The position numbers were made by a program, and so were the translations under genes. From positions 1-64,000 of IMG/VR virus record IMGVR_UViG_3300034073_003340: a DNA stretch of 64,000 nucleotides; one strand, written 5' to 3'. Below are positions 9,394-58,176 of the stretch, in pieces. Every line of letters begins with the position of its first letter. Position 1 is the first letter of the stretch. Below the pieces are notes generated by a model. It was not told the origin of the DNA. It did not search any database and worked only from the letters and a program-made list of their open reading frames with translations.

Positions 9394-10232
9394 TTATAGA
9401 CGGTTGCCAGGAATCTGCTCAGGAAGCGCGGTCATTAGACCGTTTGCCTGCGTTGCGTTATCAAAACGAACAGTCAACGTAATGGTCTGGAAACCGGATT
9501 CAGCATAGTCCAGATCCATGTAGTCAACGTTCTGTAGGAAGCAACCTTCAAGCGTCCATGTCTCAACGACAGTGTCATTGCCACCGTCCATGGTCTCAAT
9601 AATGGTTACAAACTTATAGTTGATACCAGAAGCAAAAGCCGTCTGCTCAAAGTGGTTGAGCTGCTTCTGTAACTGGTGCCCAACAAGCTTAGCAACGTTG
9701 TTGGTCAAGTCATCCTTGAGAACAATCTGCAAGGTCTCCCACGTATGCTTACCAGCATAGTAGGCGGTGCTGTTGTAACTATGAACAGGAACTTCTTCGT
9801 GGGCAATTTTTGGTTTGCCAACGCTCTGAACCTGCTGGGTGAAGTCGAGACCACCTGCGATTGGACCAAAGTTAACCACGCGGACGCGGAAGCGATACTT
9901 ATACTTGAGTTGGAGAAGACCACCGCGGCCCTGTCCGCCTCCAAGTGGAACCATTTGTATTCAATCAGTGTCGTTAATACTGATCCGCCTTACGGCTGCT
10001 CATTGTTACCAATGAGATTAGACTATATCATGACCCACTTGGGGCCCCACCCGTTTCAGCCCACTTGGGCCTACGACCTTTCGGTCTAGTCGTTGAACGT
10101 TCCGGTTCATAACTCCGGCTTCGCTGCTGATTGTCCCTGAGGGATTTTCCAGCAATTAGAGTGGTTTTTCGACCAGGATCACTCCTGGAAGCAGCTATTC
10201 CTTTAACCGAACTTAGATAGAGTTTCTGCCAT
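9394..10232 (-). CDS. Tail tube protein (T4 gp19-like), spliced: exon 1 10232-10206, exon 2 9951-9394 (194 aa)
   Basis: GGAGG RBS plus ATG GCA GAA ACT CTA TCT AAG TTC GGT (MAETLSKFG) joins in frame to GTT CCA CTT (VPLGGGQGRGGLLQ...KYRFRV). Also YYAGKHTW and W-x-L-x-GCF tube motifs. Confidence 0.92.
9952..10205 (-). mobile_element. Group I intron (subgroup IA-like, 254 nt, no internal ORF)
   Basis: P AATTGCTGGAAA, Q AATCAGCAG, R GTTCAACGACTA, S ATGATATAGTCT. Exon-terminal U pairs with G in P1 (CGGU|UA with UAGCUG). P10 GGAAU pairs with exon 2 GUUCC. P3 CCACTC/GGGTGG. P7.1 GACC-GAAA-GGTC and P7.2 GCCC-AAGT-GGGC. Terminal omega-G. Confidence 0.95.
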
Positions 10233-10329: not shown

Positions 10330-11142
10330 ATGTATTACGTTTATACCTTGTGTGATCCAAGAAGAGATGACCAACCATTTTATGTTGGCAAGGGATCACG
10401 AGACCGATGTAAGTCCCATCTATATGAAACGTATCAGAATACGAGCAATCGCCGCAAGTGGTGTAAGATAGCTGCTATTAAGAAGTCCGGGCTTGAAGTT
10501 ACTATCAAAAAGATTCAAGAGGATTTATCAGAGTCTGATGCTTATGATCTGGAAGAAGAATTAATCAAGAAGTACGGTAGAATAGGCTATGAATCCAATG
10601 GCATCTTAACCAACATATGTGAATCTTCTCGTCCTCCCTCTGCTAAAGGAAGAATGATATCAGATGAAACTCGTAGAAAGCATAGTGAACGCCAAAAAGG
10701 TCCACTAAATCATAGATATGGTATCAAGATGTCAGATGAGGAAAAGGAATATAGGCGTCGATTTAATTTAGAAAATGGTATCAGACCGCCTGATAGGACA
10801 GGGGTTTCCCACACTGAAGAGACCAAAATCAAGATGAGTCTAGCCAGCAAAGGTAAGAAGAAAAGCCCTGAGCATTGTAAGGCGATTGGTGAAGCTCGTC
10901 GTGGAAAATCTCTAGGACCATGTTCCAATGAGAAAGCCAAGAAAATAGCAGAATCACAGTATAGAAACTATCAGCTTACTAGCCCTGAAGGTAAAAATTA
11001 CACAGTGAACACAAGTAAACTAAGAGAGATGATAAAGATATTCAATTGGTCATATGGGGGAATCATGGCAGCTAAAATTGCTGGGAGAAAATATCGAGGT
11101 TGGACTATTTTAGATCTGGGACGATCTAAAATACCAGATTAA
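10330..11142 (+). CDS. Free-standing GIY-YIG-type homing endonuclease with NUMOD3-like repeats
   Basis: YYVY...PFYVGKG...R...H catalytic module and basic GxxxSxETxxKxS repeats. Opposite strand to its neighbours. Confidence 0.85.
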   Translation: MYYVYTLCDPRRDDQPFYVGKGSRDRCKSHLYETYQNTSNRRKWCKIAAIKKSGLEVTIKKIQEDLSESDAYDLEEELIKKYGRIGYESNGILTNICESSRPPSAKGRMISDETRRKHSERQKGPLNHRYGIKMSDEEKEYRRRFNLENGIRPPDRTGVSHTEETKIKMSLASKGKKKSPEHCKAIGEARRGKSLGPCSNEKAKKIAESQYRNYQLTSPEGKNYTVNTSKLREMIKIFNWSYGGIMAAKIAGRKYRGWTILDLGRSKIPD

Positions 11143-12051
11143 CTAGTATTCCTGAACCGCGACGATTTTAGCCTTAGTGGTCAGATATTCCCAAAGAGGA
11201 TCATCAGTTGGTTTCCCAGCCCAATAATTTTCTGCGGCTGTTTTGAGTTCCTGGCTATCATAGTCGTGTCCGTCGTCTACCAGGGAAGATATAAGACTAG
11301 ACCAGTTCATATCATGCTTATAAACAGGCCCTAGAGGTTGTAAGGTGAACACGTATTCAGTTGAGCCTCCCGCCGAATCCAAATCATCTTCATTACTAAC
11401 CATGAAAACCGCATCACGGTGAGAAAGCTTGTCGGCTGGTCGATAGCGTTCTAGAACTTCAAAAAACGGCACATATCCCCAGTCACGATCATAATCACTT
11501 CCTCGACCGGTTAGGATCGTTCCTACGTCTAATTCATTGACGCTGGAGTGATAATAGAGACGAGTATTCAAAGATTCTTCCAGTTGTCCTGGAGTGATAG
11601 ATTTCATAAATTTCAGGAAAGTGGAGGTAGAAATGTTCCAATCTGTGGAATTTTCAACCATTCTTACCAAATTAGGCGCATACAGATCAAAATTAAAAAC
11701 CGCAGACTCAAAATCGTTGTATTCTCGTTCTATCCAATCAGCAATAGAATCATTGGTGACTTTTCCGTCGCCGTCAAACAGAGAACCCCTTACATAAACC
11801 GCAACGTGATAGACTCTAGCATCCGAAGTCAGAATATCTTCTGGCTCAGCTTCATCTCCATCTCCATATACGTCCTCACAGATTACTACTATTCTGGGGA
11901 CCTCACCTTGCTCTTCGAGAATCGTAGCCAAAGCCAAGGCAAATGTCCCACAGTTTCCTGAGAATAGATTACCACTACCAAAATGAGATTGGCAAGAATT
12001 TATCAAACCAACAATATCCAATTTGGATTCAGAGATTTCAGACCAGCGCAT
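11143..12051 (-). CDS. Two-domain protein: papain-like Cys-His-Asp domain plus Arr-like ADP-ribosyltransferase-like domain; probable head-packaged effector
   Basis: NCGTFALAL / YHVAVY / FDGDG in the N-half. LYYHSS...L-x-VGTIL...AVFMV...YW-x-G...WEYL in the C-half. Each domain is preceded by an xxES site. Late promoter upstream. Confidence 0.55.
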   Translation of the reverse strand: MRWSEISESKLDIVGLINSCQSHFGSGNLFSGNCGTFALALATILEEQGEVPRIVVICEDVYGDGDEAEPEDILTSDARVYHVAVYVRGSLFDGDGKVTNDSIADWIEREYNDFESAVFNFDLYAPNLVRMVENSTDWNISTSTFLKFMKSITPGQLEESLNTRLYYHSSVNELDVGTILTGRGSDYDRDWGYVPFFEVLERYRPADKLSHRDAVFMVSNEDDLDSAGGSTEYVFTLQPLGPVYKHDMNWSSLISSLVDDGHDYDSQELKTAAENYWAGKPTDDPLWEYLTTKAKIVAVQEY

Positions 12052-13337: not shown

Positions 13338-15080
13338 TTACTTCGAGAAGAAATCGCTCATCACCTGGGGAGCATCCTGGCTAAAGCCAACTACGTCCAA
13401 CATACCAGCGTCCTTGGGGTCCGCAATGGTACAGCTGGTCGCAGTCATACCAACCACAACAGACTTAGCAGGGATGCCAGTCTTCTGTCGGTAAGTCTTC
13501 AGAGCCTGAGAAGGAGCCTGACGACCCGCATAGGTCTCGTTGTCCGTGTAGACAGCGAAGTTCTCCACGGGCAGCTTGTTATCAAGCGCCCACTCAAAGG
13601 GTAGCGAGCAGTCCGTGTTACCGAACGGCAGGCCCGAGATCGTGTTGATCACGTCATCCAGTCGCTGACGCGGACTGATCTTCAGGATCGACACCGGACC
13701 AGCATCCTTGACGTTGGCGTTCATGCGACCTCCATAGCCGTAACCATAGCCGCTACGACCACTGCCACCAGTGAATCCAATGAACTCATAAGAGTTCTCG
13801 ACATTCGCCGTGATCAACGCCATAGCCGCCGAAGCGTCACGAGCAGTTAGTCCCGGAATGTTGCCGATGGCAGCACTGCCCATGGACCCCGACACGTCAA
13901 GAGCTAGCAGCGTATTCTTGCCGGTCGGGGCCACATTGCCAAACGAGGCATAAAATGCCTGGTCGAGCGAGTCTACAACGCCGCGAACGACGTTCCAGGA
14001 CAGACTACCCTTGAAACCACGACCCTGACCGTAGGTCTTCATCGCAGCAAGGATAGCAATTGGGTGAACACGAGCCTTGCGAAGAGCCTCACCATCGGAA
14101 AGCTTGGCCTTGACCAGCTTCTCGGCGGCAGACATCGGAGTCAGAAGACCAACACTTGACATCTTGCCCAGGTTACGAATCATCGCAGTCAGCGACATGT
14201 TGGTCAGCAAAGCCTCCCAAACATTGGCATCGTTAAGGAACTGAGTGGGAATCGCCTCACGAGGAAGGTTGTGATCCACAATCAGCTGGATGATCTCCTT
14301 GGCAGAAGTTGCCTTCTTTGCCGCCTCAAATGCGAGAATCTGAGGGTGGAGAACACCAGACACGTCAGAACGGGACAGGCGAACCTCGCTTTCAAGATTT
14401 GCCGAGCCACGAACGTAGTCCGTAGCACCAACATTCGACATTCCACCAACCATCCAACGCAGGACAGCATCACGCGCAACATCGTCCGTCTTGGGGTGAC
14501 CCAGACGAAGCATGTCACGGTGCGACCATCCATCGCGCTGCTGATACTTGATCGCCTGGTTAGCCAGCCGGTCAAGTGGCATCTCTAGATACCAGTTACC
14601 TACTGCTCGACGTAGAGCGCGCCCCCAACCGCGAACGCCGTCCACAAAGGCAGCAAAGTGGAACAGATGGGTTCCAATCCGAGCGACCTTGGGTAGAGCG
14701 TCAAGAGCAGCCTTACGAGTTGCCTCGCTGTCAGCTGCCGATGCTAGAGCCAGAACGAATAGAGCAGGGTCGTTCTTGGGAGCGCGGCCAGAGTCACTGA
14801 TCTCTACCACACGATTTACAACGCGGATGCCATCCTCGTCAATTAGACGCAGGACGTTCTGAGCATTGGACTTGGTCAGCTCGCGCTCACCCACATAGTA
14901 GGTTCCACCCTCGGTTCCGAGGATCAGGAAGCGATCAAGCTGATCCCATGGAGAAACCACGAAGGTGAATCCACCGGCGTTATTCTTGGCCATTTCCGAC
15001 TCACGGCCCGGAATGGGCTGAGTCTGCGGCGTCTGCTTGGAAGCAATGGCACCCATCAGGACGTTCTTGGAATTACTCAT
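13338..15080 (-). CDS. rsr: Ro60/TROVE-vWA RNA-binding protein (Rsr)
   Basis: NNAGGFTF, LDRFLILGTEGGTYY, IKYQQRDGWSHRD, ALDVSGSM (MIDAS), VYTDNET and GMLDVVGF. GAGGAG RBS before ATG 15080. Confidence 0.95.
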   Translation of the reverse strand: MSNSKNVLMGAIASKQTPQTQPIPGRESEMAKNNAGGFTFVVSPWDQLDRFLILGTEGGTYYVGERELTKSNAQNVLRLIDEDGIRVVNRVVEISDSGRAPKNDPALFVLALASAADSEATRKAALDALPKVARIGTHLFHFAAFVDGVRGWGRALRRAVGNWYLEMPLDRLANQAIKYQQRDGWSHRDMLRLGHPKTDDVARDAVLRWMVGGMSNVGATDYVRGSANLESEVRLSRSDVSGVLHPQILAFEAAKKATSAKEIIQLIVDHNLPREAIPTQFLNDANVWEALLTNMSLTAMIRNLGKMSSVGLLTPMSAAEKLVKAKLSDGEALRKARVHPIAILAAMKTYGQGRGFKGSLSWNVVRGVVDSLDQAFYASFGNVAPTGKNTLLALDVSGSMGSAAIGNIPGLTARDASAAMALITANVENSYEFIGFTGGSGRSGYGYGYGGRMNANVKDAGPVSILKISPRQRLDDVINTISGLPFGNTDCSLPFEWALDNKLPVENFAVYTDNETYAGRQAPSQALKTYRQKTGIPAKSVVVGMTATSCTIADPKDAGMLDVVGFSQDAPQVMSDFFSK

Positions 15081-15097
15081 GATCTGTACTCCTCTTT

Positions 15098-15252
15098 TCG
15101 GCTCGTGAAACCCACGAGCAAGGTTGGCCTCTGACATCAAGGCCGGTAGTTCGATCTAGGGAGTGGGGTGACGGCCACTCGGCTCACAGCTTACGCTGTG
15201 ATTGAGAAACGGACGGTTTTCTATAGAAACACAAAGCGGACGGGCTTTGTGA
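15098..15252 (-). ncRNA. Structured RNA immediately upstream of rsr (leader or Y-RNA-like candidate)
   Basis: Six consecutive hairpins in about 155 nt. Three have CCGUC-containing loops and one has a GUAA tetraloop. Confidence 0.5.
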
Positions 15253-21198: not shown

Positions 21199-21834
21199 AT
21201 GTCAAATGATTTCTACGTCTATCTTCTACTTGATCCTAGAAGATACTATCTACCATTTTATATCGGCAAAGGCAAAGGTGATAGAGCAAACCATCATTTG
21301 AAATATGAGAGTCACGCAAAAACCAATACTTTCAAAAAATCAGTCATACAAAAGATTAGAATTAGTGGTCAAGAACCAAAGGTTATGTTCTGGGCTGTAA
21401 ATCTAACTGAATCAGAGGCTTTTGACTTAGAAAAGCAACTTATAGCAAGATTTGGTAGAAGAGATCTGAAAACTGGTATTCTAACCAATCTGTCAGAAGG
21501 TGGATTCGGAAATGCTGGAAGAAAATTCACAGAGGAACATCGAAGGAAGATGTCTGAAGCTGCTAAAGGTAGAAAACACACTGACGAATCCAAAGCTAAA
21601 ATTAGTCTGAAACGTAAAGGCGTTTTGGCCTCAGAAGAAACTAAAAAGAAACTATCTGAAGCGAAAAAGGGGAAAGGTGTCGGATCGGCCAATCCAATGT
21701 ATGGACGGCGTGGAGAATTACATCACAACTACGGAAAAGAAGGTCTTACTGGTGAAAAGAATGGAATGTTCGGTCGCAGACATTCACCGGAAACCATAGA
21801 AAAGATCCGTCAGAAAGCATTAGCTAGGAAGTAA
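21199..21834 (+). CDS. Free-standing GIY-YIG-type homing endonuclease with NUMOD3-like repeats
   Basis: FYVYLL-x-DPR...PFYIGKG...R...H; G-x-K-x-T/S-EE-x-R/K-x-K repeats and NPMYG/NGMFG. Confidence 0.85.
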   Translation: MSNDFYVYLLLDPRRYYLPFYIGKGKGDRANHHLKYESHAKTNTFKKSVIQKIRISGQEPKVMFWAVNLTESEAFDLEKQLIARFGRRDLKTGILTNLSEGGFGNAGRKFTEEHRRKMSEAAKGRKHTDESKAKISLKRKGVLASEETKKKLSEAKKGKGVGSANPMYGRRGELHHNYGKEGLTGEKNGMFGRRHSPETIEKIRQKALARK

Positions 21835-28029: not shown

Positions 28030-28674
28030 ATGACTACCAGGAAAGTCTACAAGGTAAAGGATTTATCAACTGGTCTCTATATGGGAAAAGGCGGGGGTTG
28101 GGATAAAAAAGGCAAAACCTGGGAGTCAATCGGTCAGCTCAAACTTACTTTGGGAAATTGCGGCTGGTGGTCTAGAAGCAATGAAAAAATGAATGACAAT
28201 GATCTTCCCAATTCTGATATAAAGATCATCGAGATTGTCATTGTTGAAGACGAAAACAATATGACTGATCTGGCTGAAATTGTTGCTCGCCAGAGGCGCT
28301 ATATCAAACTTGAAGAGAAATTCGGCAGCTCGTTCAGAGAGCTAGTAGAGAGGATCGAGGCACAAGGCCAGGTCAATCAGTTCCAGTGGGTTATGATTGT
28401 TGAATCAAGCTACGACTATAACAACAAAGCCCACAAAGGCGATATCGTGGAAATGCTTGATATGATTAAGCATTTGAAACTCAAACAAAACAAAGACTAC
28501 AAGAAGGCCTCAAGCTATTTCAACCAGCAAGCCGCTATAGCATTTGCTAGCAAGCAGGTTGCCATGCAGGTGAGGCTAGGAATGAAGGCAAGAGTCCAAG
28601 GTGTGGATATCAAGGATTTTGTTGAAACAAATCTTGACGAATCGGAAAAACCCCTGCTAAATAGTAGCACATAA
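28030..28674 (+). CDS. Hypothetical protein, paralog family B
   Basis: VYKVKDLSTG...GKTW N-terminus and C-terminal layout similar to 37329..37910. Confidence 0.7.
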   Translation: MTTRKVYKVKDLSTGLYMGKGGGWDKKGKTWESIGQLKLTLGNCGWWSRSNEKMNDNDLPNSDIKIIEIVIVEDENNMTDLAEIVARQRRYIKLEEKFGSSFRELVERIEAQGQVNQFQWVMIVESSYDYNNKAHKGDIVEMLDMIKHLKLKQNKDYKKASSYFNQQAAIAFASKQVAMQVRLGMKARVQGVDIKDFVETNLDESEKPLLNSST

Positions 28675-28739: not shown

Positions 28740-29735
28740 ATGACACTGAAATCACAAATTCTCGATCTGTCGCGTCAGAATAACATTGGCGCACTTTCCC
28801 CATTCATCGATAAGCTGTTTGATGAACAGATTGAACGGGGACTTTTCCCCACTACGTCTGATCTCGCAGCGACCAAGGACGCCATCATCAAGTTTCTTGA
28901 AGACTATCGTGAGCAGACCGGTCGACAGACGGTAGTCCTGGGGATGAGTGGCGGTGTAGACTCGGCACTGACTGCCGCACTTTTCAAAAGCGCAGGCTGG
29001 CGCGTTATTGGCGTTACCATGCCAATCCATCAGAACCCCGAGGAAACCGCCCGAGGCAAGGAAGCTTGTGAGGCTCTCGGTATTGAAGCTCGTCATATCG
29101 ATCTTTCCGATCTGTATGATGTCACCCTGAAGCACGAAGCCGTTCTGGACCCTGAGCTCAATGGTCCGATTATGGAAACCTTTGGTAACGAATTGCGTGT
29201 GGCAATTCGCAAGGGTAATATCCGGGCGCGCCTTCGCATGGTCACCCTCTACAACCTTGCTGCCAAGGAAGGCGGCATCGTGGCTTCAACTGATAACTTC
29301 AGTGAACTCGGAGCCGGTTTCTGGACGCTACACGGCGACGTGGGCGATGTTTCACCCATCCAGGCGCTGCTGAAAAGCTGGGAGGTACCATACATCTCGA
29401 GCATTGCTGGTGTTCCTGAAAGCACCTATCGCGCGACGCCAACCGACGGACTCGGCATCAGCAATGGTGACGAAGCTCAGCTAGGAGCCAGCTACCTCGA
29501 GTGGGATATCATGGTAAACGCCATGATGACGCTGGATCTGCATTCTCTGAAGAAGTTCATTGAAGCCAGCCAGGACGAACGAGCCATGGTGGTATTTTCA
29601 GCGGTTAGCCAGCGACTTGGTAGCAGCTGGTTCAAGCGTATGAACCCGGTCAATACCAAGCATCCCCTATTCCCTGACCGTTATGAGCAGCTTGCTGGCT
29701 TGGATCAAGAATTCCAGCCCAAGGTGGTCCTCTAA
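28740..29735 (+). CDS. nadE: NH3-dependent NAD+ synthetase
   Basis: VVLGMSGGVDS PP-loop, GNIRARLRMVTLY, TDNFSE...GFWTLHGD and PTDGL. No glutaminase domain. Confidence 0.92.
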   Translation: MTLKSQILDLSRQNNIGALSPFIDKLFDEQIERGLFPTTSDLAATKDAIIKFLEDYREQTGRQTVVLGMSGGVDSALTAALFKSAGWRVIGVTMPIHQNPEETARGKEACEALGIEARHIDLSDLYDVTLKHEAVLDPELNGPIMETFGNELRVAIRKGNIRARLRMVTLYNLAAKEGGIVASTDNFSELGAGFWTLHGDVGDVSPIQALLKSWEVPYISSIAGVPESTYRATPTDGLGISNGDEAQLGASYLEWDIMVNAMMTLDLHSLKKFIEASQDERAMVVFSAVSQRLGSSWFKRMNPVNTKHPLFPDRYEQLAGLDQEFQPKVVL

Positions 29736-29802
29736 ACACAATCTGGTTGCGATAGCGCGAAAACGTGCTATCGCACCATTTGTAACTGAATAGGAGGATC
29801 AT

Positions 29803-31116
29803 ATGGTCGATCTCGCAACTCGCGCCCACAATCACAACTGGCGCATGGATCCCATTATCAGGTCCCTATTGGACACTGATTTTTACAAGCTTATGATGGG
29901 CCAGTTCATTTTTGAACGTCATCCCAATCATATCATCACTTTTGGTCTCAAGAATCGAACCAAGACCTTTGTTCTTGCTGATCACATCAACATCAATGAT
30001 CTAACTGAGCAGCTTGATCATGTGAGATCTCTTCGATTCACTCCTCAGGAGTTGATCTGGCTCCAGGGCAATACATTCTATGGTCAAGAAAGAATCTTCA
30101 AGCCCGCATATATCAATTTCCTACGGACTTTGAAACTTCCTCCATATAGCATCGGGTTCAACGAGGATGGAGATTACTCCATCACCTTTACTGGGACTTG
30201 GGCCGAAGTGACCTTCTGGGAGATTTATTGTCTCTCAATTGTAAGCGAGCTCAAGACTCGTGCCGCACTTCGGACGCTCAGCAAGTTTGAACTTGATATT
30301 CTCTATTCAAATGCCAAGTCTAAGCTTTGGAAGAATTTGAAGAGGATTCGCAAAGCGGAAGTTCGTGGTCTATCGGATATGGGAACGCGTCGTAGACATA
30401 GTTTCCTCTATCAGGAATGGGCGGTGCTCGCTGCGGCTGAAGCCTTGGACCAAGGGTTTGCTGGAACCAGCAACGCATATCTTGCTATGAAGTATGGCTT
30501 TGAAGCTATCGGAACTAATGCTCATGAGATGCCCATGGTATTAGCTGCTATCAAAGCAAGTCAGGGCGGCACCGATGAAGAAATCCGCCAAACCCAGTAT
30601 GATTTTCTACAGGGATGGCAGAATGGATACTCCGGAAACGTGTTGGTGGCTTTGCCTGATACTTTTGGAACAACACAGTTTCTCAGGGACGCACCACAGT
30701 ATCTAAGCAATTGGCGTGGATTCCGTCCTGATAGCAAAAAGCCAGACGAGGCAACTGAAGAGCTTATTGCTTTTTGGAAGCGTATGGGTGTTGATCCTTT
30801 GAAGAAGCTGGTTCTTTATAGTGACGGACTGGATGTGGATGAAATTATTCGCATTTGGAATAAGTGGAACGGTATCGTCCAAATTGGTTTTGGATGGGGG
30901 ACCAACCTGACCAATGACTTCAGGGATTGTCACCCGCGCGGGGAAACTACGCTGGATCCACTATCACTGGTTTGTAAGGTAATTGAAGCCAATGGTCATC
31001 CGGCGGTCAAGCTGTCTGACAATTACTCTAAGGCCACTGGTGATAAGGCCGAAGTAGATCGCTATCGTAGAATTTTCGGTAGCGAAGGAATGAGCAACAT
31101 TGGAGTTGTGGTATAA
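29803..31116 (+). CDS. pncB: Nicotinate phosphoribosyltransferase
   Basis: SLLDTDFYKL, DMGTRRRHSF, GTSN, GTNAHE (phospho-His), LPDTFGT, RPDS, SDGLD, FGWGTNLTND and VKLSDN. Alphaproteobacterial-style N-terminus. Confidence 0.95.
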   Translation: MVDLATRAHNHNWRMDPIIRSLLDTDFYKLMMGQFIFERHPNHIITFGLKNRTKTFVLADHININDLTEQLDHVRSLRFTPQELIWLQGNTFYGQERIFKPAYINFLRTLKLPPYSIGFNEDGDYSITFTGTWAEVTFWEIYCLSIVSELKTRAALRTLSKFELDILYSNAKSKLWKNLKRIRKAEVRGLSDMGTRRRHSFLYQEWAVLAAAEALDQGFAGTSNAYLAMKYGFEAIGTNAHEMPMVLAAIKASQGGTDEEIRQTQYDFLQGWQNGYSGNVLVALPDTFGTTQFLRDAPQYLSNWRGFRPDSKKPDEATEELIAFWKRMGVDPLKKLVLYSDGLDVDEIIRIWNKWNGIVQIGFGWGTNLTNDFRDCHPRGETTLDPLSLVCKVIEANGHPAVKLSDNYSKATGDKAEVDRYRRIFGSEGMSNIGVVV

Positions 31117-31457
31117 TGACAGCCAATCCTAGATATGCTTGTACCACCCCTGGTTGTGGTATGAAAAATACCCGCAAGCAACTTAGGATCAATAATGGCA
31201 TTTGTCCACATTGTAAGACCGCGATGTCTCATAAGGATTGGATGGGACAACATACTGCCACAATAGCGCAAGTTCTTTCTCTTCCCAAAGCTGATGAAAT
31301 CAGCGTAGGAGACATTGCGGAAATCGTCGGTATCAGTCGGGTTGATTTGATCAATTTGGCTGTCCAGGAAAAGATTAGGGTTTGGACTTCTGACCCAAAT
31401 AATATAGAAGCTGCTGTGAAGCAGGATTTAATGCTCGCAAAGCTCTATAGGAGATAA
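31116..31457 (+). CDS. Zn-ribbon plus HTH-like protein
   Basis: CxxxxC...CPHC followed by SVGDIAEIVGISRVDLINL. Confidence 0.5.
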   Translation: MTANPRYACTTPGCGMKNTRKQLRINNGICPHCKTAMSHKDWMGQHTATIAQVLSLPKADEISVGDIAEIVGISRVDLINLAVQEKIRVWTSDPNNIEAAVKQDLMLAKLYRR

Positions 31458-31461
31458 AGAT

Positions 31462-32139
31462 ATGGCTTATTGTTATCCGTTTCGCATGGCAAGTGGCACA
31501 GCCACTATGCTGCCAATTGATGCTAAGAATCAAAGGGTTCTTCTTGGGGTTCGTTCTAAGAACGCTTGGGTATATCCTGGAAAGCTCAGCCTCGCAGGTG
31601 GCTTTATGGAAGCTCGCTTTGTTGAGGAGCAGGATCACGATCTGATGAAGCAGGCCCGGCAGTTTGTTATGAATCTCCTGGGGTGGAAGTTGGTCGCAGA
31701 CGAATACGCCGAGGGTGAAAATCTCGAAGAATGCGCGATTCGTGAACTGGAAGAAGAAATGGGCATCAAAGTTGATATTGATCAGCTCAAGATGTTCTCG
31801 GTGCGATCAAACTGTCGCACCGATACTCGTGCCCATGTGATCAATGCCTGTTACTACTTTGAGATGACTGACGAGCAAATCAAAGCTGCTACGGCCGGTG
31901 ACGATCTCGATTTTCTGGTCTGGCACTACATGGCCGACTTTGATATTGAGATTCCATATCAGGCACTGGAAGCCAAATATGATATGGCGTTCAACCACTT
32001 CGAGGTCATGATTCAGGGAATCGCAGCTTGGCGCAAGGAACAGCGATACAAGAACCTCGAAGCCGAGGTCGCTAGACTGCGCGAGCAGGTTAGCAACCTT
32101 AGCTGGGGAATGGCTGGCGATCGCCAGGGAGGCGTATAA
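31462..32139 (+). CDS. Nudix hydrolase (ADP-ribose pyrophosphatase/NrtR-type domain) with C-terminal coiled coil
   Basis: LAGGFME, Nudix box GENLEECAIRELEEEMGI, RTDTRAHVINACY and MAFNH. Confidence 0.85.
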   Translation: MAYCYPFRMASGTATMLPIDAKNQRVLLGVRSKNAWVYPGKLSLAGGFMEARFVEEQDHDLMKQARQFVMNLLGWKLVADEYAEGENLEECAIRELEEEMGIKVDIDQLKMFSVRSNCRTDTRAHVINACYYFEMTDEQIKAATAGDDLDFLVWHYMADFDIEIPYQALEAKYDMAFNHFEVMIQGIAAWRKEQRYKNLEAEVARLREQVSNLSWGMAGDRQGGV

Positions 32140-32744
32140 TGGCAAAAAGAACCGCACTAGCAGCAATGCGAACTATGCCTCTACATAAGGGGCATACTAT
32201 GATTGCCCAGCAGATGGTTGACAACTATGACACGGTGATCATTTGTAATGGTTCGGCAGACAAACCGATCACAATTCAGAATCCATTTCCTGTACAGGTT
32301 CGTATGGAGATGTGGAAGAGAGTGTTTGGTGATCGTATCAAGCTGGTTCCAGTATCTGATCTTGGAGCCACCCGTGACACCAACGAGTGGTGCGACTATC
32401 TTTTGAGCAAAATCAAGGGTCTTGGTTTGCCTGATCCCACCGATTACTGGACTGGTTCACCGGCAGATGCTATTTGGTATCGGGGTCGATTCTTCAATAA
32501 GGAGTGTGGCTCACCGGCTGATGATAATACCGATGAGTTCATCCAGCGATACATGCCAAATGGGGTCTTCCGTCAGCTTCATATGGTCGAGCGGACTGGA
32601 AACTATATTCCCAGCGCCACTGAACTGCGCCAGTTCATGGTTACCAGAGATGACGGTTGGAAACGCTGGGTTCCAGCTGTAATACATGATCTAGTCGAGG
32701 AGCATTTTCCCGAAGAGTTCAAAGTGGGACACGGAGACAAATAA
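32139..32744 (+). CDS. NadM-like NMN/NaMN adenylyltransferase
   Basis: PLHKGH (HxGH), GSA...NPF...R-x-EM and SATELR. Confidence 0.85.
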   Translation: MAKRTALAAMRTMPLHKGHTMIAQQMVDNYDTVIICNGSADKPITIQNPFPVQVRMEMWKRVFGDRIKLVPVSDLGATRDTNEWCDYLLSKIKGLGLPDPTDYWTGSPADAIWYRGRFFNKECGSPADDNTDEFIQRYMPNGVFRQLHMVERTGNYIPSATELRQFMVTRDDGWKRWVPAVIHDLVEEHFPEEFKVGHGDK

Positions 32745-33082
32745 TGGGTGACATGGGAGATCTGTTCAAGGATCTTAAGGATATCAAGAAACAGCGGGCC
32801 CAATCAAGAGTTGATGAGTTTAAACAGAAGAAAGAATTCATTGAAAACTCTATCACCCAATCGGCCAACGAACGACGTGGAGAAGTCTATTTCAGAGTCG
32901 ATGATAGTGGAACCTTTAACGTCCATCTGATTAGTAACCGGATTACTGGAACCAGGAACAACAGAGCTACGATACAGTTCTATCCTACCAAGGGATCATG
33001 GCAGTTCAAGGGAAAAATGTTTCACGGTGGTGTAGACGCCTTTGTGGCATGGGCCACAAAAACGATAAGGAAGACATTATGA
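32744..33082 (+). CDS. Hypothetical protein
   Basis: 112 aa, translationally coupled; MGDMGD...QFYPTKG pattern. Confidence 0.65.
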   Translation: MGDMGDLFKDLKDIKKQRAQSRVDEFKQKKEFIENSITQSANERRGEVYFRVDDSGTFNVHLISNRITGTRNNRATIQFYPTKGSWQFKGKMFHGGVDAFVAWATKTIRKTL

Positions 33083-33507
33083 GTGCGATCATCCAGACCG
33101 TAGCATCAGTTGAGCCATATGGTGAAAACCTCTCCATCGTGACCACTAGCGAAGGACACAAGGTTATCGCGAATCGCAAAGAAGATGGCAGTTTTCGCTG
33201 GACCACGGGAGAAGTCATCTGCTATGTCAGCGAAGGATCCATTATCCCTGACGACGTCCTCAAGGAGCGTGGCTACTGGGACGCTGAAAAGGATCGAGGT
33301 CTACTCGACGGTGGCAAGCGAAATCGCGTCAAGATGAAGAAGTTGGCCGGCTTCGAATCACGTGGTTTGCTTTTCAAAGTCATGGAAGGCGGAGCAGGTC
33401 CTCTAAATGGAGACCTTTGGATAGTTCGAGGTGATCAGTCTAGCAATATGTTGACTCTAGGCGATGATGTATCAGAATTCCTAGGTATTGTTGAATTTCA
33501 GGGATGA
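33079..33507 (+). CDS. Stand-alone OB-fold resembling the N-terminal domain of DRB0094/Rnl5-type RNA ligases
   Basis: GEVICYVSEGSIIP...RVKMKKLAGFESRGLL...GDDVSEFLGI pattern. ATG 33079 overlaps the upstream stop. Confidence 0.6.
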   Translation: MSAIIQTVASVEPYGENLSIVTTSEGHKVIANRKEDGSFRWTTGEVICYVSEGSIIPDDVLKERGYWDAEKDRGLLDGGKRNRVKMKKLAGFESRGLLFKVMEGGAGPLNGDLWIVRGDQSSNMLTLGDDVSEFLGIVEFQG

Positions 33508-33560
33508 TCCAGATTGACAACTTGAAACTAGGATGTAGATAAAAAGGATTGGAGAATAAA

Positions 33561-34181
33561 ATGTCAAAGTTTCTCATAGTTGTCGATACACAAAGGGATT
33601 TTATGTATCCAGACGGCGCCCTGTATGTCAGCGGTGCTGATACTTTTATTCCTGCTGCCAATAGCTTTTTGCGTAATTTAGACGCACCGGAATATTCTGG
33701 TGTTCTGTTTACCATGGACACCCACACTCCTGAGGAATATGCCGGCTCACCTGAGAGTGAGATGTTTGGTCCACATTGTGTAAAGGGAACAGACGGTTGG
33801 ACCAATGTGTTCGATCCCGAATATATGAGCAAAGCGTTTCCGATCTATTATCTAGAAAAGGGCGTTTTCAATATGTGGGAAGAGCCCGGTCTCCAGATAT
33901 ATCCGACTAGTGGGGTCCTGAATTCCTATGACCATACTCGCGGGCTCCAGGGAGATGAAGAAGGTATTGATCGTGATCAATTCTTCCAGCAGCTTTTAAG
34001 TCAGGGTATGACTATTCAAGTATTTGGTGTTGCGAGCGATTACTGCGTCAAATGGGCAGTAGATGGTTTGATCCGTCGAGGATTTACCGTAGAGGTTATC
34101 GACGATCTCTGCCGGGGCATATCCACGCCGGCAAGCGAGGTATTTGCAGGTTCGGAATATCAACAGGTGAGGATCGTATAA
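33561..34181 (+). CDS. pncA: Nicotinamidase
   Basis: LIVVDTQRDF, DTH, PHCV-x-GT-x-G, KG and GVASDYCVK. GGAG RBS. Confidence 0.9.
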   Translation: MSKFLIVVDTQRDFMYPDGALYVSGADTFIPAANSFLRNLDAPEYSGVLFTMDTHTPEEYAGSPESEMFGPHCVKGTDGWTNVFDPEYMSKAFPIYYLEKGVFNMWEEPGLQIYPTSGVLNSYDHTRGLQGDEEGIDRDQFFQQLLSQGMTIQVFGVASDYCVKWAVDGLIRRGFTVEVIDDLCRGISTPASEVFAGSEYQQVRIV

Positions 34182-34654
34182 TGGGCATAGTAATTAAAAG
34201 CCCAAATAGCCTGCTACCTATTCGCAATCGTAGTATTTTCTTGGCTGGTGGGATTAGCAATTGTCCCGACTGGCAGGAGACGACTGCTCAGCGCATTGCC
34301 AATAGCGTGGATGACTGTATTGTCTATAACCCCCGGCGTGATGACTTTGATATGTCAGCGTATGAGGAAATCAGTAGACAACAGATCACCTGGGAATATC
34401 ATGCCCTCCGAATGTCCTCGGTGAACCTTTTTTGGTTTCCGGCCGAGACTCTTTGTCCCATTACTCTCTTTGAGTATGGTAGTGCGATAGAGCGTCTCCC
34501 CGACGGTGCGGTAATGTGTGGCACCCATCCCGACTATGAGCGTCGCTTCGATCTCGTTGAGCAGACACGCTTGCGAAACGGTATGCCAATCTTCAATGAT
34601 CTGGATCAACTTATCAAAGAAACCATCATACTGCTGAAAAGCATTCCTGCTTGA
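34181..34654 (+). CDS. Nucleoside 2-deoxyribosyltransferase-like protein
   Basis: IFLAGGI...WQ...NPRR...QI-x-WE...FWF...PITLFEYG. ATG overlaps the pncA stop. Confidence 0.8.
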   Translation: MGIVIKSPNSLLPIRNRSIFLAGGISNCPDWQETTAQRIANSVDDCIVYNPRRDDFDMSAYEEISRQQITWEYHALRMSSVNLFWFPAETLCPITLFEYGSAIERLPDGAVMCGTHPDYERRFDLVEQTRLRNGMPIFNDLDQLIKETIILLKSIPA

Positions 34655-34699
34655 CATATCTCCTTTCTCTGCTAATCAGGTGGGGAAAGGAGATACATC

Positions 34700-35359
34700 G
34701 TGACACCGCCAAAATATCCGCGCACATTCCACTGGCCATGGTCCCAGCAGGTTCACAGTGATGACTCCTATCATCAAGATCCTGAATTCTTTGTTGGCAA
34801 GGATGTTGTCGTAACTGAAAAGCTTGATGGTGGAAATACTGCTCTCAATGGGGGAAGTGTCTATGCCCGATCAACAGGTCAAGAAGCAACGCAAGGCTGG
34901 TTTGCCCATGTGAAGAAGTATCACGCATGGAAATCCACTGGTCTTGATCCTGATATTACCATTTACGGCGAAGATTTAGCGGCTCTTCATTCCATCAAGT
35001 ATCAGATTCCAATGGATAAAACCTATAAGGTTTTTGCGGTAAGGGAAAAAGATCAGTTCCTTTCCTGGGAGTCAGTGGTTTCCACTGCTAGCCAAATTCA
35101 TCTGGATATTGTTCCCGTGATTTTCAACGGTCGTTTCAACAGCATCAAGGAAATCACCAAGTTCTTTGAAGACGAGATTCGCAAGCCAAGTAAGTTCGGC
35201 ACAGAACGCGAAGGGTTTGTGATGAGAACTGTTGATGGGTTCGATGCCAGCAAATTCTCTCAGAATGTCTGTAAGTATGTGAGAAAGAACCACGTTCAAA
35301 CAGACGAGCACTGGACCAAGAACTGGACTTGGAACGATTTGAGCCAGCCCGGTTACTAA
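34700..35359 (+). CDS. ATP-dependent RNA ligase (nucleotidyltransferase domain only)
   Basis: KYPRT-x-H, motif I TEKLDGGN, IYGE, FAV, EGFVMR and KYVR. Confidence 0.85.
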   Translation: MTPPKYPRTFHWPWSQQVHSDDSYHQDPEFFVGKDVVVTEKLDGGNTALNGGSVYARSTGQEATQGWFAHVKKYHAWKSTGLDPDITIYGEDLAALHSIKYQIPMDKTYKVFAVREKDQFLSWESVVSTASQIHLDIVPVIFNGRFNSIKEITKFFEDEIRKPSKFGTEREGFVMRTVDGFDASKFSQNVCKYVRKNHVQTDEHWTKNWTWNDLSQPGY

Positions 35360-35405
35360 ATTGACTCTTTGGGCCTTTTGAGCACAAAGTAAGCCCAAAG
35401 AGTCA

Positions 35406-36900: not shown

Positions 36901-36987
36901 TATAACAGAATGAGAATACAAATATAGACAGGTGACAGTTCACCTGTCTACCGTGTCCAAGAAGGTTAAAAACCACTTGGAGCACCA

Positions 36988-37910: not shown

Positions 37911-37992
37911 TCAAACCTTTGCCTTTCTGGTTGACATCCTATCTTCTGAGTGTAGAAATAGGATATAGACAGCAAGGCAAAGGAGATCGAAA

Positions 37993-39087: not shown

Positions 39088-39636
39088 ATGATAACCTTAT
39101 TTCTTCTTGCCTGCGCTCTAGCAGCCGATGGCTTTGCTGTTTCAATTGCTCGCGGAGCAGCTAGTGATCATAGCTGGAAGAATGCTTTTGTTACTGGAAT
39201 AGCGTTTGGATTAACGCATGTTGCCATGATAGCGTTGGGCTGGTTTGTTGGTGATATCATATATGATTGGAAAGATGTTGCTCCTTGGATAGCCTGTGTG
39301 ATACTTTGCCTATTGGGCGGAAAAATGATCTTAGAGGGTTGCGACAACTCCAGTGAATGCGAAACTAATCAAGTTAGCAACAACAACGCATTTGCCCTCA
39401 TAGGGCTTCTGAGCGCGTCTCTGGCTACTAGTTTGGATGGCGCTGCCGCAGGTATTACCCTTCCTCTTATGGGTCTATCTTTTGCTTTAAATGCGATTGT
39501 TATAGGAGGAGTGACCACGTTACTCTGTGTTGCCGGATACCGAGCAGGAGCCCTCATAGGGGCTCGTTGGGGCAAATACGCAGAGTCTGCTGGTGGTGTT
39601 GTCCTTATAGTAATTGGGATGAACCTTATTCCTTGA
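39088..39636 (+). CDS. mntP: Manganese efflux pump MntP-like membrane protein
   Basis: Twin motifs ALAADGFAVS and ATSLDGAAAG, six hydrophobic segments, G-x-x-AE-x-x-GGVVLI-x-IG. Confidence 0.82.
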   Translation: MITLFLLACALAADGFAVSIARGAASDHSWKNAFVTGIAFGLTHVAMIALGWFVGDIIYDWKDVAPWIACVILCLLGGKMILEGCDNSSECETNQVSNNNAFALIGLLSASLATSLDGAAAGITLPLMGLSFALNAIVIGGVTTLLCVAGYRAGALIGARWGKYAESAGGVVLIVIGMNLIP

Positions 39637-57102: not shown

Positions 57103-57317
57103 GTGAGTTTGAACCTCAACGCATCACTTATGTTCTTAAAAGAAAAGATTGTTGAAAACGCGTCTGGATTCGCTGTCCAAGACCATTCCTTTTCATTCAA
57201 GTTATCCAACAACCACTTATGGCAATCTGGGGTTATTTGTATTCTCTCCCAGATATCGTATGATACACCTTGTCTGCCATCAGCATGTGGTGCTACTTCA
57301 ATGTTGATGTGGATCAT
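57093..57317 (-). CDS. Hypothetical protein
   Basis: Ends F[13 protein letters not shown]. Confidence 0.6.
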
Positions 57318-58176
57318 CTACAAACATTCCACAACTAGCCTTGACATCAAAGCCGACTCTTGGAACAATCCTACTACTCTCATTACCAAACGCCTCAGCA
57401 AGAATATCAAAGTTTCGCTGTATGATCTCTTCACTGGGTTCATTACCTTGAGCTGGGCTATAGGGATTATAGCGAACCAAATTGAACTTTACATCTAGAC
57501 TGCGAACCAAGATAGCCATAATGATTTCTTCCAAGACTTCAAGACTATCATTTTGGTCCTCAATAAAAGACCAATGAAGAGTAACAAGCTGACCAGTCTT
57601 TTGCTGCCATTCCACAAGCTTCCATAACGCATCATGTGGGTTCATTGACTTAGGAAGCCATCTTTTTCGAAAGTCGTCTCTCATAGAATAGAGAGAATAA
57701 TAGATCTGTGCCCCAGTGTCACCAAAGATGTCATAAAGACTACGATCTGAAACCTCTTCTGGCATAATTGTGCTGATGTTGTATTTGGCTATCAGAGCGT
57801 GTTGCTCTGCGAGGCTCTGTAAGGGCCTACAAACATCATCCCACTTAGATAGCACTGTGGGGTTAGATAACGGCTCACCACGCGCCATGAAGTTGAAATT
57901 GACCCTCTGGGCATCATCAAACTGACGATAATGACGAAACACCTGCAGGGCTTGGTTTTCGTAGTCCCAAGCACTAGCAGGTGTCATCATAGTTTGGCGA
58001 GTCTGAGTCAAATGACAAAACCTACAAGCTTTATTACAACCTGTGTGGCTGCTCAAATAGGTTATAAAATAATCCTCTTGGCGCCGTACATACCTAGCCT
58101 CAAAGGCTCCTTTGTCATCGTGTGGGATGACAAAATTTACACTGGCATCTTCGGCGCTATAGAGGACTCTAGTCAT
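57298..58176 (-). CDS. RlmN/Cfr-like radical SAM enzyme
   Basis: [13 protein letters not shown] (CxxxCxxC), FMARGEP (cf. MGMGEP), SL-x-S, ND, NL-x-x-YNP and ASCG. Confidence 0.8.

What the first reader, a model, noticed from the sequence alone, without database searches (positions are those of the whole stretch)
28740..34654. Complete phage-encoded deamidating (Preiss-Handler) NAD+ rebuilding pathway
Seen in one co-directional cluster: nadE, pncB, Nudix, NadM-like adenylyltransferase, pncA and an NDT-like gene, all with intact catalytic motifs. Established chemistry: nicotinamide to nicotinate (PncA), to NaMN (PncB + PRPP), to NaAD (adenylyltransferase), to NAD+ (NadE). ADPR pyrophosphatase yields ribose-5-P for PRPP, and the NH3 released by PncA is NadE's substrate. 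The phage NAD reconstitution routes I know (NARP1: ADPR-PP synthetase + Namat; NARP2: Nampt + Nmnat) are two-enzyme amidated routes. Inference: a distinct four-step route that recycles both NADase products to defeat NAD-depleting defences (SIR2/TIR/SEFIR effectors). Whether it is already described needs a literature check.
Basis: partly seen in the sequence, partly recalled or inferred. Interest (0 to 1): 0.85.

Follow-up and report, generated by a model that had tools for sequence, protein, structure and literature searches.

The report
Jumbo-phage nicotinamide-to-NAD salvage gene cluster
A giant soil phage carries, side by side, all four enzymes needed to turn nicotinamide back into NAD+ by the nicotinic-acid route, plus an ADP-ribose-type Nudix enzyme. 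Related gene sets have already been catalogued in giant phages, but nobody has tested this route as a counter to bacterial NAD-destroying defences.

Summary
Window 28740-34654 (+) encodes NadE, PncB, a Nudix protein, a NadM-type adenylyltransferase, a PncA-type nicotinamidase and an NDT-fold protein. Catalytic motifs are intact, and three small unknown ORFs lie in between.

The window is the first 64 kb of a 436-kb IMG/VR jumbo myophage related to Agrobacterium phage Atu_ph07 and Sinorhizobium phage Phosso.

Comparative evidence for a working pathway is strong:
- The four core enzymes recur together in different gene orders in at least five divergent phage lineages, once as a bare four-gene operon.
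- Two relatives carry a glutamine-dependent two-domain NadE in the NadE slot, and one carries a canonical nicotinamidase in the PncA slot.
- Non-synonymous divergence is low while synonymous sites are saturated.

The Nudix model is closest to ADP-ribose-binding Nudix domains (NrtR, NadM-Nudix).

Three parts of the interpretation are not supported:
- No PRPP synthetase lies in the window or in any fetched locus.
- Ammonia hand-over from PncA to NadE is not conserved.
- The anti-defence role is untested.

Novelty is limited. Preiss-Handler clusters in jumbo phages were published in 2024, and Phosso's GenBank record already names most of these genes. The new elements are the PncA entry step, the phage-specific NadM, and the candidacy as a fourth NAD+ reconstitution route.

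The parts
28030..28674 (+). Conserved unknown ORF (214 aa) directly upstream of nadE. It is a neighbour, not shown to belong to the pathway.
   Evidence: No Pfam, PHROG or NCBIfam hit. Syntenic upstream of NadE in all close IMG/VR loci and in the distant L019. Absent from Phosso and from the L021 and L024 types.
28740..29735 (+). NadE: single-domain NAD+ synthetase, 331 aa, with N- and C-terminal extensions.
   Evidence: PF02540 4.8e-41; TIGR00552 136.8 bits (cut-off 63.65); closest named family is the archaeal-type NF010587, below its cut-off. Best PDB hit is P. horikoshii NadE 2e18. SGGVDS and the other core motifs are invariant. pN 0.055 against pS 0.64 versus L003.
29803..31116 (+). PncB: nicotinate phosphoribosyltransferase, 437 aa.
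   Evidence: NF003704 432.8 bits (cut-off 379); TIGR01514 277 bits (cut-off 269.55); PF04095 and PF17767. 54-56% identical to the PncB of Atu_ph07 and Phosso.
31116..31457 (+). Unknown small ORF (113 aa) between pncB and the Nudix gene.
   Evidence: Only a weak UPF0175 hit (0.0064). The Atlas search was uninformative. Syntenic in the close clade only.
31462..32139 (+). Nudix hydrolase (225 aa), putative ADP-ribose pyrophosphatase. It has an insertion in the Nudix box and a long C-terminal helix.
   Evidence: PF00293 6e-11. REUxEE is intact and the insertion is visible. AF2 model pLDDT 85.5. Best Foldseek hits are the NrtR-like 2fml, the NrtR Nudix domain with ADPR (3gz8) and NadM-Nudix ADPRases 2qjt/2r5w/2qjo. 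The family has 69 clusters; none carries an organism name, 16 sit on contigs over 100 kb, 5 are identifiable as the IMG/VR contigs found here, and most are on short fragments of unknown origin.
32139..32744 (+). NadM-type (archaeal-type) NMN/NaMN adenylyltransferase, 201 aa.
   Evidence: RxxPxHxGH and PSATELR are invariant. The profile hits only NadM-type NMNATs in the PDB, with 1f9a at 1.8e-14. Scores are below the NCBIfam cut-offs. It is the most constrained gene, pN 0.023. Only 4 distant MAG relatives were found in 185,579 species genomes.
32744..33082 (+). Unknown small ORF (112 aa).
   Evidence: No family hit. The Atlas search returned only unnamed viral clusters. Syntenic in the close clade.
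33079..33507 (+). 142-aa protein resembling the N-terminal module of DraRnl/Rnl5-type RNA ligases. Probably not part of NAD metabolism.
   Evidence: phrog_968 positions 12-135 of 398, and a weak TIGR02306 hit. The true start at 33079 comes from alignment with relatives.
33549..34181 (+). PncA-type nicotinamidase (210 aa), a divergent isochorismatase-family member.
   Evidence: PF00857 5.7e-10. Best PDB hits are nicotinamidases 3pl1, 1ilw and 2wt9. The D13/K104/C166 triad and D57/H59/H76 metal site are invariant across 10 sequences, including a canonical nicotinamidase. In L004 the same slot holds an equivalog-level nicotinamidase.
34181..34654 (+). NDT-fold (PF15891) protein, 157 aa, start overlapping the pncA stop codon by 1 nt. 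Substrate unknown; an accessory member.
   Evidence: PF15891 1.9e-17. Start refined. AF2 pLDDT 76; Foldseek hits are 4mcj (6e-9), then DNPH1 and MilB. Missing in L005 and in the searched Atu_ph07 flanks. No literature found.
34700..35359 (+). RNA-ligase nucleotidyltransferase-domain protein (219 aa). A neighbour, probably unrelated to NAD synthesis.
   Evidence: PF09414 7.9e-21 over the full profile. phrog_24030 positions 135-333 of 342. Syntenic in the close clade only.

Best explanation
The cluster is a phage-encoded deamidating NAD+ salvage module.

Proposed steps:
1. PncA hydrolyses nicotinamide to nicotinate.
2. PncB, using PRPP and ATP, makes NaMN.
3. The NadM-type adenylyltransferase makes NaAD.
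4. NadE amidates NaAD to NAD+.

The adjacent Nudix enzyme most likely hydrolyses ADP-ribose to AMP and ribose-5-phosphate. This mirrors the NadM-Nudix fusion enzymes of bacteria and phage KVP40. PRPP itself has to come from a Prs encoded elsewhere, by the host or another part of the phage genome.

The module raises or restores the NAD+ pool during the long infection of a roughly 436-kb phage. Because its entry substrate is nicotinamide, a product of NADase cleavage, it is a plausible fourth kind of NAD+ reconstitution route against NAD-depleting defences.

Shown here: gene identities, motifs, conservation and selection. Inferred: substrate order, the Nudix substrate and the biological role.
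For: Enzyme identities and catalytic residues are established.

The four core genes cluster in several orders across divergent phages:
- the window clade;
- Phosso;
- Atu_ph07, with Nudix-NadM-PncA next to PncB and NadE elsewhere in the genome;
- L019 and L021;
- L024-L028, as a bare PncB-NadE-NadM-PncA operon.

Functional replacements occur in the same slots:
- L005 and L006 carry a two-domain glutamine-dependent NAD synthetase (NF010588, 647 bits, cut-off 479).
- L004 carries a canonical nicotinamidase (NF008623, 198 bits, cut-off 174; 2wt9 at 3e-53).

The canonical two-domain synthetase sits next to a NadM 81% identical to the window's. That argues NadM supplies NaAD, as in Acinetobacter. 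Archaeal NadM is bifunctional for NMN and NaMN, and the archaeal-type single-domain NadE is a true ammonia-dependent NAD synthetase (PMC3376133).

The Nudix model is nearest to ADPR-binding Nudix domains. In L022 the NadM and Nudix domains form one fused protein next to PncB and PncA.

pN is 0.02-0.18 while pS is saturated at 0.6-0.8. Gene starts and stops abut or overlap, as in an operon.

NAD-synthesis pathways of phages (NARP2, NARP3) have been shown to counter NADase defences (PMC13464706).
Against: - No enzyme was assayed.
- NadM and PncA score below the curated NCBIfam cut-offs.
- The Nudix box carries an unusual insertion, and the margin over other Nudix folds is modest.
- No Prs is in the window or the fetched flanks.
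- The NadE C-terminal extension aligns with the C-terminal loop of the glutamine-dependent forms, so strict ammonia dependence is not certain.
- The cluster lies among structural genes, and no recognisable promoter or timing signal was found.
- Nothing links these phages to NADase-bearing hosts.
Confidence: 0.7

Rival explanations
1. The genes are the same but the role is different. The module is a general auxiliary metabolic pathway. It tops up NAD+ for the phage's own long, NAD-hungry replication and is not an adaptation against NADase defences.
For: Jumbo phages commonly carry NAD synthesis genes together with NAD-consuming enzymes (PMC11662467). The relative Atu_ph07 also carries PnuC and NadR, which suggests a general investment in NAD supply. 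The cluster sits among structural genes and no early-expression signal was found.
Against: The same kinds of 'metabolic' genes (Nampt+Nmnat, PnuC+NadR) turned out to rescue phages from NADase defences (PMC13464706). PncA and an ADPR-type Nudix act on precisely the NADase products. The two roles are not exclusive.
Confidence: 0.4
2. The order follows Francisella. NadE acts as an NMN synthetase (NaMN to NMN), and the NadM-type enzyme then adenylylates NMN to NAD+.
For: The phage has a NadM-type and no NadD-type enzyme. That is the genomic signature that accompanies NMN synthetase in Francisella (PMC3376133). The Francisella enzyme 3fiu is among the PDB hits, with a score close to those of true NAD synthetases.
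Against: Close relatives pair the same NadM with a canonical two-domain NAD synthetase. The closest named NadE family is the archaeal type, whose tested member has no NMN synthetase activity. Archaeal and Acinetobacter NadM accept NaMN.
Confidence: 0.15
3. The Nudix protein is not an ADP-ribose pyrophosphatase. It might hydrolyse NAD(H) or NAD-capped RNA, degrade ADPR-derived immune signals, or act as an ADPR-sensing regulator like NrtR.
For: The best structural hits include NrtR regulators (2fml, 3gz8, 3gz5), and Dcp2 decapping enzymes are not far behind. The Nudix box carries an insertion and there is a 40-residue C-terminal helix. The L024-L028 operons lack the Nudix gene, so it is dispensable for the core route.
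Against: The catalytic REUxEE glutamates are invariant in 36 sequences. No DNA-binding domain was detected. The NadM-Nudix ADPRases are among the top hits, and the domains are fused in L022.
Confidence: 0.3
4. The cluster is a passively carried, recently captured host operon with no function for the phage.
For: Pathway genes of this kind are common in bacteria.
Against: There is no close cellular relative of the NadM subfamily: 4 MAG hits at 25-36% identity. The cluster has been retained across lineages that share only about 40-55% protein identity. Functional replacements occur in the same slots and purifying selection is strong. G+C content shows no anomaly.
Confidence: 0.03

Closest known systems
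Preiss-Handler gene clusters of 'NAD-jumbo phages' (PMC11662467, Microbiome 2024; e.g. Kuafu_71 pncB-nadD-nadE)
   Same: A phage over 200 kb carrying physically clustered genes sufficient for deamidated NAD+ synthesis. That paper also mentions phage pncA.
   Different: Here the adenylyltransferase is a phage-specific NadM type, not NadD. A nicotinamidase gives entry from nicotinamide. An ADPR-type Nudix and an NDT-fold gene are attached. In both cases the evidence is genomic only.
NARP2 (Nampt + Nmnat; Vibrio phage KVP40 type) and NARP3 (PnuC + NadR, PMC13464706)
   Same: Phage-encoded salvage of a pyridine precursor into NAD+, ending with an HxGH adenylyltransferase. KVP40 NatV also joins NMNAT and Nudix.
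   Different: Those are two-enzyme amidated routes through NMN. This one is a four-enzyme deamidated route through nicotinate, NaMN and NaAD, and it costs more ATP. No Nampt, NadR or PnuC is in the window.
NARP1 (Adps + Namat)
   Same: Both would make use of NADase products.
   Different: NARP1 phosphorylates ADPR directly to ADPR-PP and couples it to nicotinamide. Here there is no PRPS-like gene, and ADPR would at best be broken down to ribose-5-P.
Bacterial and archaeal PncA-PncB-NadM-NadE networks (Acinetobacter; Archaea) and bifunctional NadM-Nudix (Synechocystis, Francisella)
   Same: The same four enzyme families, with NadM standing in for NadD. The Nudix partner is of the ADPR-binding subfamily (PMC3376133).
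   Different: NadM and Nudix are separate genes in the reverse order. The NadM, PncA, NadE and Nudix subfamilies are divergent and appear virus-restricted. The genes form one tight phage cluster.
Annotated clusters in Sinorhizobium phage Phosso (PV764938) and Agrobacterium phage Atu_ph07 (MF403008)
   Same: Orthologous genes at 31-56% identity. Phosso has the same order.
   Different: In Atu_ph07 the set is dispersed, with NadE about 85 kb away. The window clade adds three small ORFs and the ligase pieces. No publication discussing the pathway in these two phages was found in the library searched.

Membership tests
Deamidating nicotinamide salvage (PncA - PncB - NaMN adenylyltransferase - NadE) | Nicotinamidase with an Asp-Lys-Cys triad and an Asp/His/His metal site | tested here: met
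   D13/K104/C166 and D57/H59/H76 are invariant and align to M. tuberculosis PncA and to a canonical nicotinamidase. The NF008623 score of 52 bits is below its cut-off of 174.
Deamidating nicotinamide salvage (PncA - PncB - NaMN adenylyltransferase - NadE) | Nicotinate phosphoribosyltransferase | tested here: met
   NF003704 432.8 bits (cut-off 379); TIGR01514 277 bits (cut-off 269.55).
Deamidating nicotinamide salvage (PncA - PncB - NaMN adenylyltransferase - NadE) | Adenylyltransferase that accepts NaMN | not testable with these tools
   The NadM-type enzyme is present. NaMN use is inferred from its pairing with a canonical two-domain NadE in L005 and L006 and from the precedent in PMC3376133.
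Deamidating nicotinamide salvage (PncA - PncB - NaMN adenylyltransferase - NadE) | NAD+ synthetase with a PP-loop | tested here: met
   PF02540 4.8e-41; TIGR00552 136.8 bits (cut-off 63.65); SGGVDS present. The substrate (NaAD or NaMN) and the nitrogen donor were not testable.
NadM family (archaeal-type NMNAT) | HxGH and SxTxxR motifs, with specific similarity to NadM rather than to other cytidylyltransferase-like enzymes | tested here: met
   Both motifs are invariant. All 11 PDB hits of the profile are NadM-type NMNATs. The curated NCBIfam cut-offs are not reached: 51.6 bits against 127.
ADP-ribose pyrophosphatase (NadM-Nudix / COG1051 type) | Intact Nudix catalytic helix and an ADPR-binding fold | tested here: inconclusive
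   REUxEE is intact, but the Nudix box is interrupted by an insertion. The top structural neighbours bind ADPR. Substrate not tested.
NARP1 | PRPS-like ADPR pyrophosphokinase (Adps) plus Namat | tested here: not met
   tblastn with E. coli Prs found no Prs-like sequence in the window or in any fetched locus. The phosphoribosyltransferase is an equivalog-level NAPRTase.
NARP2 | Nampt plus Nmnat | tested here: not met
   An NMNAT-type enzyme is present, but the phosphoribosyltransferase is PncB, not Nampt.
NARP3 | PnuC transporter plus a NadR-like bifunctional enzyme | tested here: not met
   The Pfam scans found no NMN_transporter or NadR in the 64-kb window. The rest of the 436-kb genome was not seen. 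Atu_ph07 has both elsewhere.
NAD-jumbo phage (PMC11662467) | Genome over 200 kb with a complete NAD+ synthesis pathway | tested here: met
   The source contig is 435,856 bp, and the full gene set is present.
Nucleoside 2-deoxyribosyltransferase superfamily (PF15891) | NDT fold with a conserved acidic residue in an ExG motif after beta-4 | tested here: met
   PF15891 at 1.9e-17. Foldseek hits are 4mcj, DNPH1, MilB and NDTs. E98 and G100 are invariant. Substrate unknown.

The most novel reading that the evidence does not exclude
This is a fourth, mechanistically distinct phage NAD+ reconstitution pathway. It would be a virus-specific PncA-PncB-NadM-NadE module, helped by an ADPR pyrophosphatase, that rebuilds NAD+ from NADase-released nicotinamide through deamidated intermediates and so rescues jumbo phages from SIR2, TIR or SEFIR NADase defences. 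The NDT-fold enzyme, whose start overlaps the pncA stop codon by 1 nt, might feed it by releasing nicotinamide from NMN or nicotinamide riboside, or by breaking down ADPR-derived signals.
Probability: 0.4. Interest if true: 0.7.

Novelty: new variant of a known kind. Interest (0 to 1): 0.5.

Why it matters
NAD+ depletion is one of the commonest bacterial anti-phage strategies. Three phage reconstitution routes have been shown experimentally so far, all through amidated intermediates. A deamidating route starting from nicotinamide would extend that list. It would also show that phages can bring in a complete four-step cofactor pathway built from virus-specific enzyme subfamilies. Cultured relatives exist (Phosso on Sinorhizobium, Atu_ph07 on Agrobacterium), so the idea can be tested directly. 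The bare four-gene operon of L024-L028 is a compact construct for such tests.

Tried and rejected
- **Nucleotide search of GenBank phages.** Megablast with the cluster found nothing. Relatives appeared only at protein level.
- **Read-through.** I considered that 32744-33082 and 32998-33507 might be one gene read through a stop or a frameshift, because they lie in one frame in some relatives. Three-frame translation of eight loci shows two separate genes with their own starts, and unrelated insertions between them in some loci. Rejected.
- **Long NDT ORF (34052 start).** Rejected in favour of 34181, from the alignment.
- **Promoter, terminator and T4-late-motif scans.** Nothing above chance.
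- **Prs in the cluster or its flanks.** None found. The GenBank-wide Prs search could not tell whether Atu_ph07 or Phosso carry one.
- **Does the window's phage carry NadR and PnuC like Atu_ph07?** The pattern-based scan returned only Atu_ph07 itself.
- **The small ORFs and the flanking unknowns.** Atlas, PHROG, Pfam and PDB searches were uninformative.
- **RNA-ligase domain protein.** phmmer against the PDB found no hit.
- **NaAD versus NaMN specificity of NadE.** PDB scores do not discriminate. The Francisella paper is not held in the library.
- **Literature.** No report was found of a phage nicotinamidase or a deamidating route tested as a counter-defence, and none on PF15891.

Full report
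**1. What is there**

ORF listing and family scans confirm a tight, co-directional block on the + strand:

| Gene | Coordinates | Size |
|---|---|---|
| NadE | 28740-29735 | 331 aa |
| PncB | 29803-31116 | 437 aa |
| unknown | 31116-31457 | 113 aa |
| Nudix | 31462-32139 | 225 aa |
| NadM-type adenylyltransferase | 32139-32744 | 201 aa |
| unknown | 32744-33082 | 112 aa |
| ligase-N-module-like protein | 33079-33507 | 142 aa |
| PncA-type nicotinamidase | 33549-34181 | 210 aa |
| NDT-fold protein | 34181-34654 | 157 aa |

Gene ends abut or overlap by 1-4 nt, except for short gaps that contain hairpins.

Two gene starts were corrected from alignments with relatives: the NDT gene starts at 34181 and the 142-aa gene at 33079. 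No read-through of a stop is needed anywhere.

**2. Where it comes from**

The window holds a T4-like portal, a prohead protease, a major head protein, tail sheath and tube proteins and an 859-aa large terminase. The NadM gene is 100% identical to IMGVR_UViG_3300034073_003340 (435,856 bp) and sits at the same coordinates there. The window is therefore the first 64 kb of that contig.

The nearest cultured relatives are Sinorhizobium phage Phosso (469 kb) and Agrobacterium phage Atu_ph07 (490 kb). TerL is 53-63% identical over the aligned parts and PncB 54-56%. There is no nucleotide-level match in GenBank phages.

**3. Are the enzymes what they seem?**

- **PncB** passes two curated NCBIfam thresholds.
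- **NadE** passes the TIGR00552 domain threshold and has the SGGVDS PP-loop. Its closest named family is the archaeal-type single-domain NadE (NF010587), and its best PDB hit is P. horikoshii 2e18.
- **PncA-like** is divergent: NF008623 gives 52 bits against a cut-off of 174. Its best PDB hits are all nicotinamidases. The Asp-Lys-Cys triad and the Asp/His/His metal site are invariant in ten sequences, including a canonical nicotinamidase.
- **NadM-like** also falls below the curated cut-offs. Both nucleotidyltransferase motifs are invariant. A profile of the family hits only NadM-type NMNATs in the PDB: M. jannaschii, M. thermautotrophicus, and the Francisella and Synechocystis NadM-Nudix enzymes.
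- **Nudix** keeps E-x7-REUxEExGU but has about 35 residues inserted after the GGF of the box. Its AF2 model (pLDDT 85.5) is closest to the NrtR-like 2fml, the NrtR Nudix domain bound to ADP-ribose (3gz8) and the NadM-Nudix ADPR pyrophosphatases. ADP-ribose is the best guess for its ligand. The margin over other Nudix folds is modest.
- **NDT-fold protein** is confirmed structurally: 4mcj, then DNPH1 and MilB. PF15891 is a largely viral family, sometimes fused to phosphoesterases or Nudix. No function has been published.

**4. Comparative evidence that the genes work together**

Nine IMG/VR contigs keep the whole block in the same order. Phosso has nadE-pncB-Nudix-NadM-PncA-NDT in order and Atu_ph07 has Nudix-NadM-PncA next to pncB, at 31-56% identity. 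Atu_ph07's NadE lies elsewhere in its genome.

A profile search with PncA found more distant phage loci in which the core is arranged differently:
- L019 and L021: NadE-PncB-Nudix-NadM-PncA.
- L024-L028: a bare PncB-NadE-NadM-PncA operon.
- L022 and L023: a fused NadM-Nudix protein followed by PncB and PncA, with a PnuC gene nearby.

Most telling are replacements in the same slot. In L005 and L006 the NadE position holds a 591-606-aa two-domain glutamine-dependent NAD synthetase (NF010588, 647 bits, cut-off 479). In L004 the PncA position holds a canonical nicotinamidase (NF008623, 198 bits, cut-off 174; 2wt9 at 3e-53). Selection therefore keeps the activities, not the particular genes.

Between the window and L003, synonymous sites are saturated (pS 0.6-0.85) while pN is 0.02-0.23. 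NadM is the most constrained gene.

The NadM subfamily is essentially viral. Only four distant MAG hits were found among 185,579 species genomes.

**5. Mechanism**

The best-supported order is nicotinamide to nicotinate (PncA), to NaMN (PncB), to NaAD (NadM), to NAD+ (NadE).

The alternative Francisella order, NaMN to NMN to NAD+, is possible because the adenylyltransferase is NadM-type. It is disfavoured for two reasons. First, orthologous NadM proteins (81% identical) are paired with a canonical two-domain NAD synthetase in L005 and L006. Second, the archaeal-type NadE that has been tested has no NMN synthetase activity, while archaeal and Acinetobacter NadM accept NaMN (PMC3376133). Under either order the gene set is sufficient.

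- Recycling of ADP-ribose into PRPP needs a Prs, and none is in the window or in any fetched locus.
- An ammonia hand-over from PncA to NadE cannot be a conserved design, given the glutamine-dependent replacements. In addition, the window NadE has a C-terminal extension that aligns with the loop used for glutaminase contacts in other forms.

**6. Role**

Nothing in the sequence shows a counter-defence role. It is plausible by analogy. NARP2 and NARP3 are ordinary salvage enzymes that rescue phages from NADases (PMC13464706). PncA and an ADPR-type Nudix act on the two NADase products. A general supply role for a large, slow phage is an equally live reading and is not exclusive of the first (PMC11662467). 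The cluster lies among structural genes, and no timing signal was found.

**7. Novelty**

- The 2024 Microbiome paper on 'NAD-jumbo phages' reports clustered pncB-nadD-nadE and mentions phage pncA.
- Phosso's GenBank record annotates nadE, pncB, the Nudix, the NMNAT and the NDT, and calls the PncA-like gene just 'hydrolase'.
- The Atu_ph07 paper names pncB, Nudix, NadR and PnuC but does not discuss a pathway.
- No paper in the library tests a deamidating route or a phage nicotinamidase against NADase defences. The NARP3 paper of August 2026 still lists only amidated routes.

I therefore rate this a new variant of a known kind: real, well conserved, experimentally open, but not a surprise to specialists.

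Noticed in passing
window 33079-33507 and 34700-35359 (+): An Rnl5/DraRnl-type RNA ligase appears split into two genes. The N-terminal module (142 aa) and a complete nucleotidyltransferase domain (219 aa) are separated by pncA and the NDT gene. The arrangement is conserved in all close IMG/VR relatives and absent from Phosso.
   Followed up: partly
L005:3445-5265, L006:3219-4994, L004:9757-10428: Gene replacements within the cluster's slots. A two-domain glutamine-dependent NadE replaces the single-domain NadE in two relatives. A canonical nicotinamidase replaces the divergent PncA in one.
   Followed up: yes
L022:7423-12691 (IMGVR_UViG_3300046003_007892, 240 kb): A different variant of the module: a fused NadM-Nudix protein, PncB, PncA, a NYN-domain protein, an outer-membrane-like protein and a PnuC transporter. 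No NadE was detected within 10 kb.
   Followed up: partly
window 9999-10215 (-) and 10330-11142 (+): A group I intron (Rfam RF00028, 85 bits) lies next to a GIY-YIG/NUMOD3 homing endonuclease gene. It probably interrupts a minus-strand gene whose pieces are 9394-9954 and 11143-12051. A second GIY-YIG/NUMOD3 ORF is at 21199-21834.
   Followed up: partly
window 13338-15140 (-): A 600-aa Ro60-like protein (TROVE plus vWA domains; phrog_850). No Y-RNA-like or tRNA gene was detected in the window by Rfam or ARAGORN.
   Followed up: partly
window 62580-63152 (+): A second cytidylyltransferase-like protein (190 aa; motif GRLNPPTRGH; phrog_3041 'cytidyltransferase'). It is distantly similar to the NadM-like enzyme and has no NCBIfam hit. 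Function unknown.
   Followed up: partly
window 39088-39636 (+): A MntP-type putative manganese efflux pump (PF02659, 1e-34) encoded next to the major head gene.
   Followed up: no
window 29745-29780, 34655-34699, 35360-35405, 36924-36951, 37911-37992: The short intergenic gaps of the + strand block each hold a different perfect or near-perfect palindrome without a T-run. These may be RNA processing or stability elements, or transcription stops of a non-canonical kind.
   Followed up: no
window 31600-31715 (Nudix residues about 49-84): An insertion of about 35 residues, including a helix, splits the Nudix box between GGF and E-x7-REUxEExGU. It is shorter in Atu_ph07 and variable across the family.
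   Followed up: partly
L008:8870-9155 and L011:8870-9140: In two relatives a small ORF with a lipoprotein-like signal (…LLIASCSQ…) is inserted between the two small genes downstream of NadM.
   Followed up: no
window 57298-58176 (-): A radical-SAM-like ORF of 292 aa, just under the Pfam cut-off (28.6 bits against 29.5). A dNMP kinase, an RNase H-like protein and an SMC/AAA_23 protein are also encoded elsewhere in the window.
   Followed up: no
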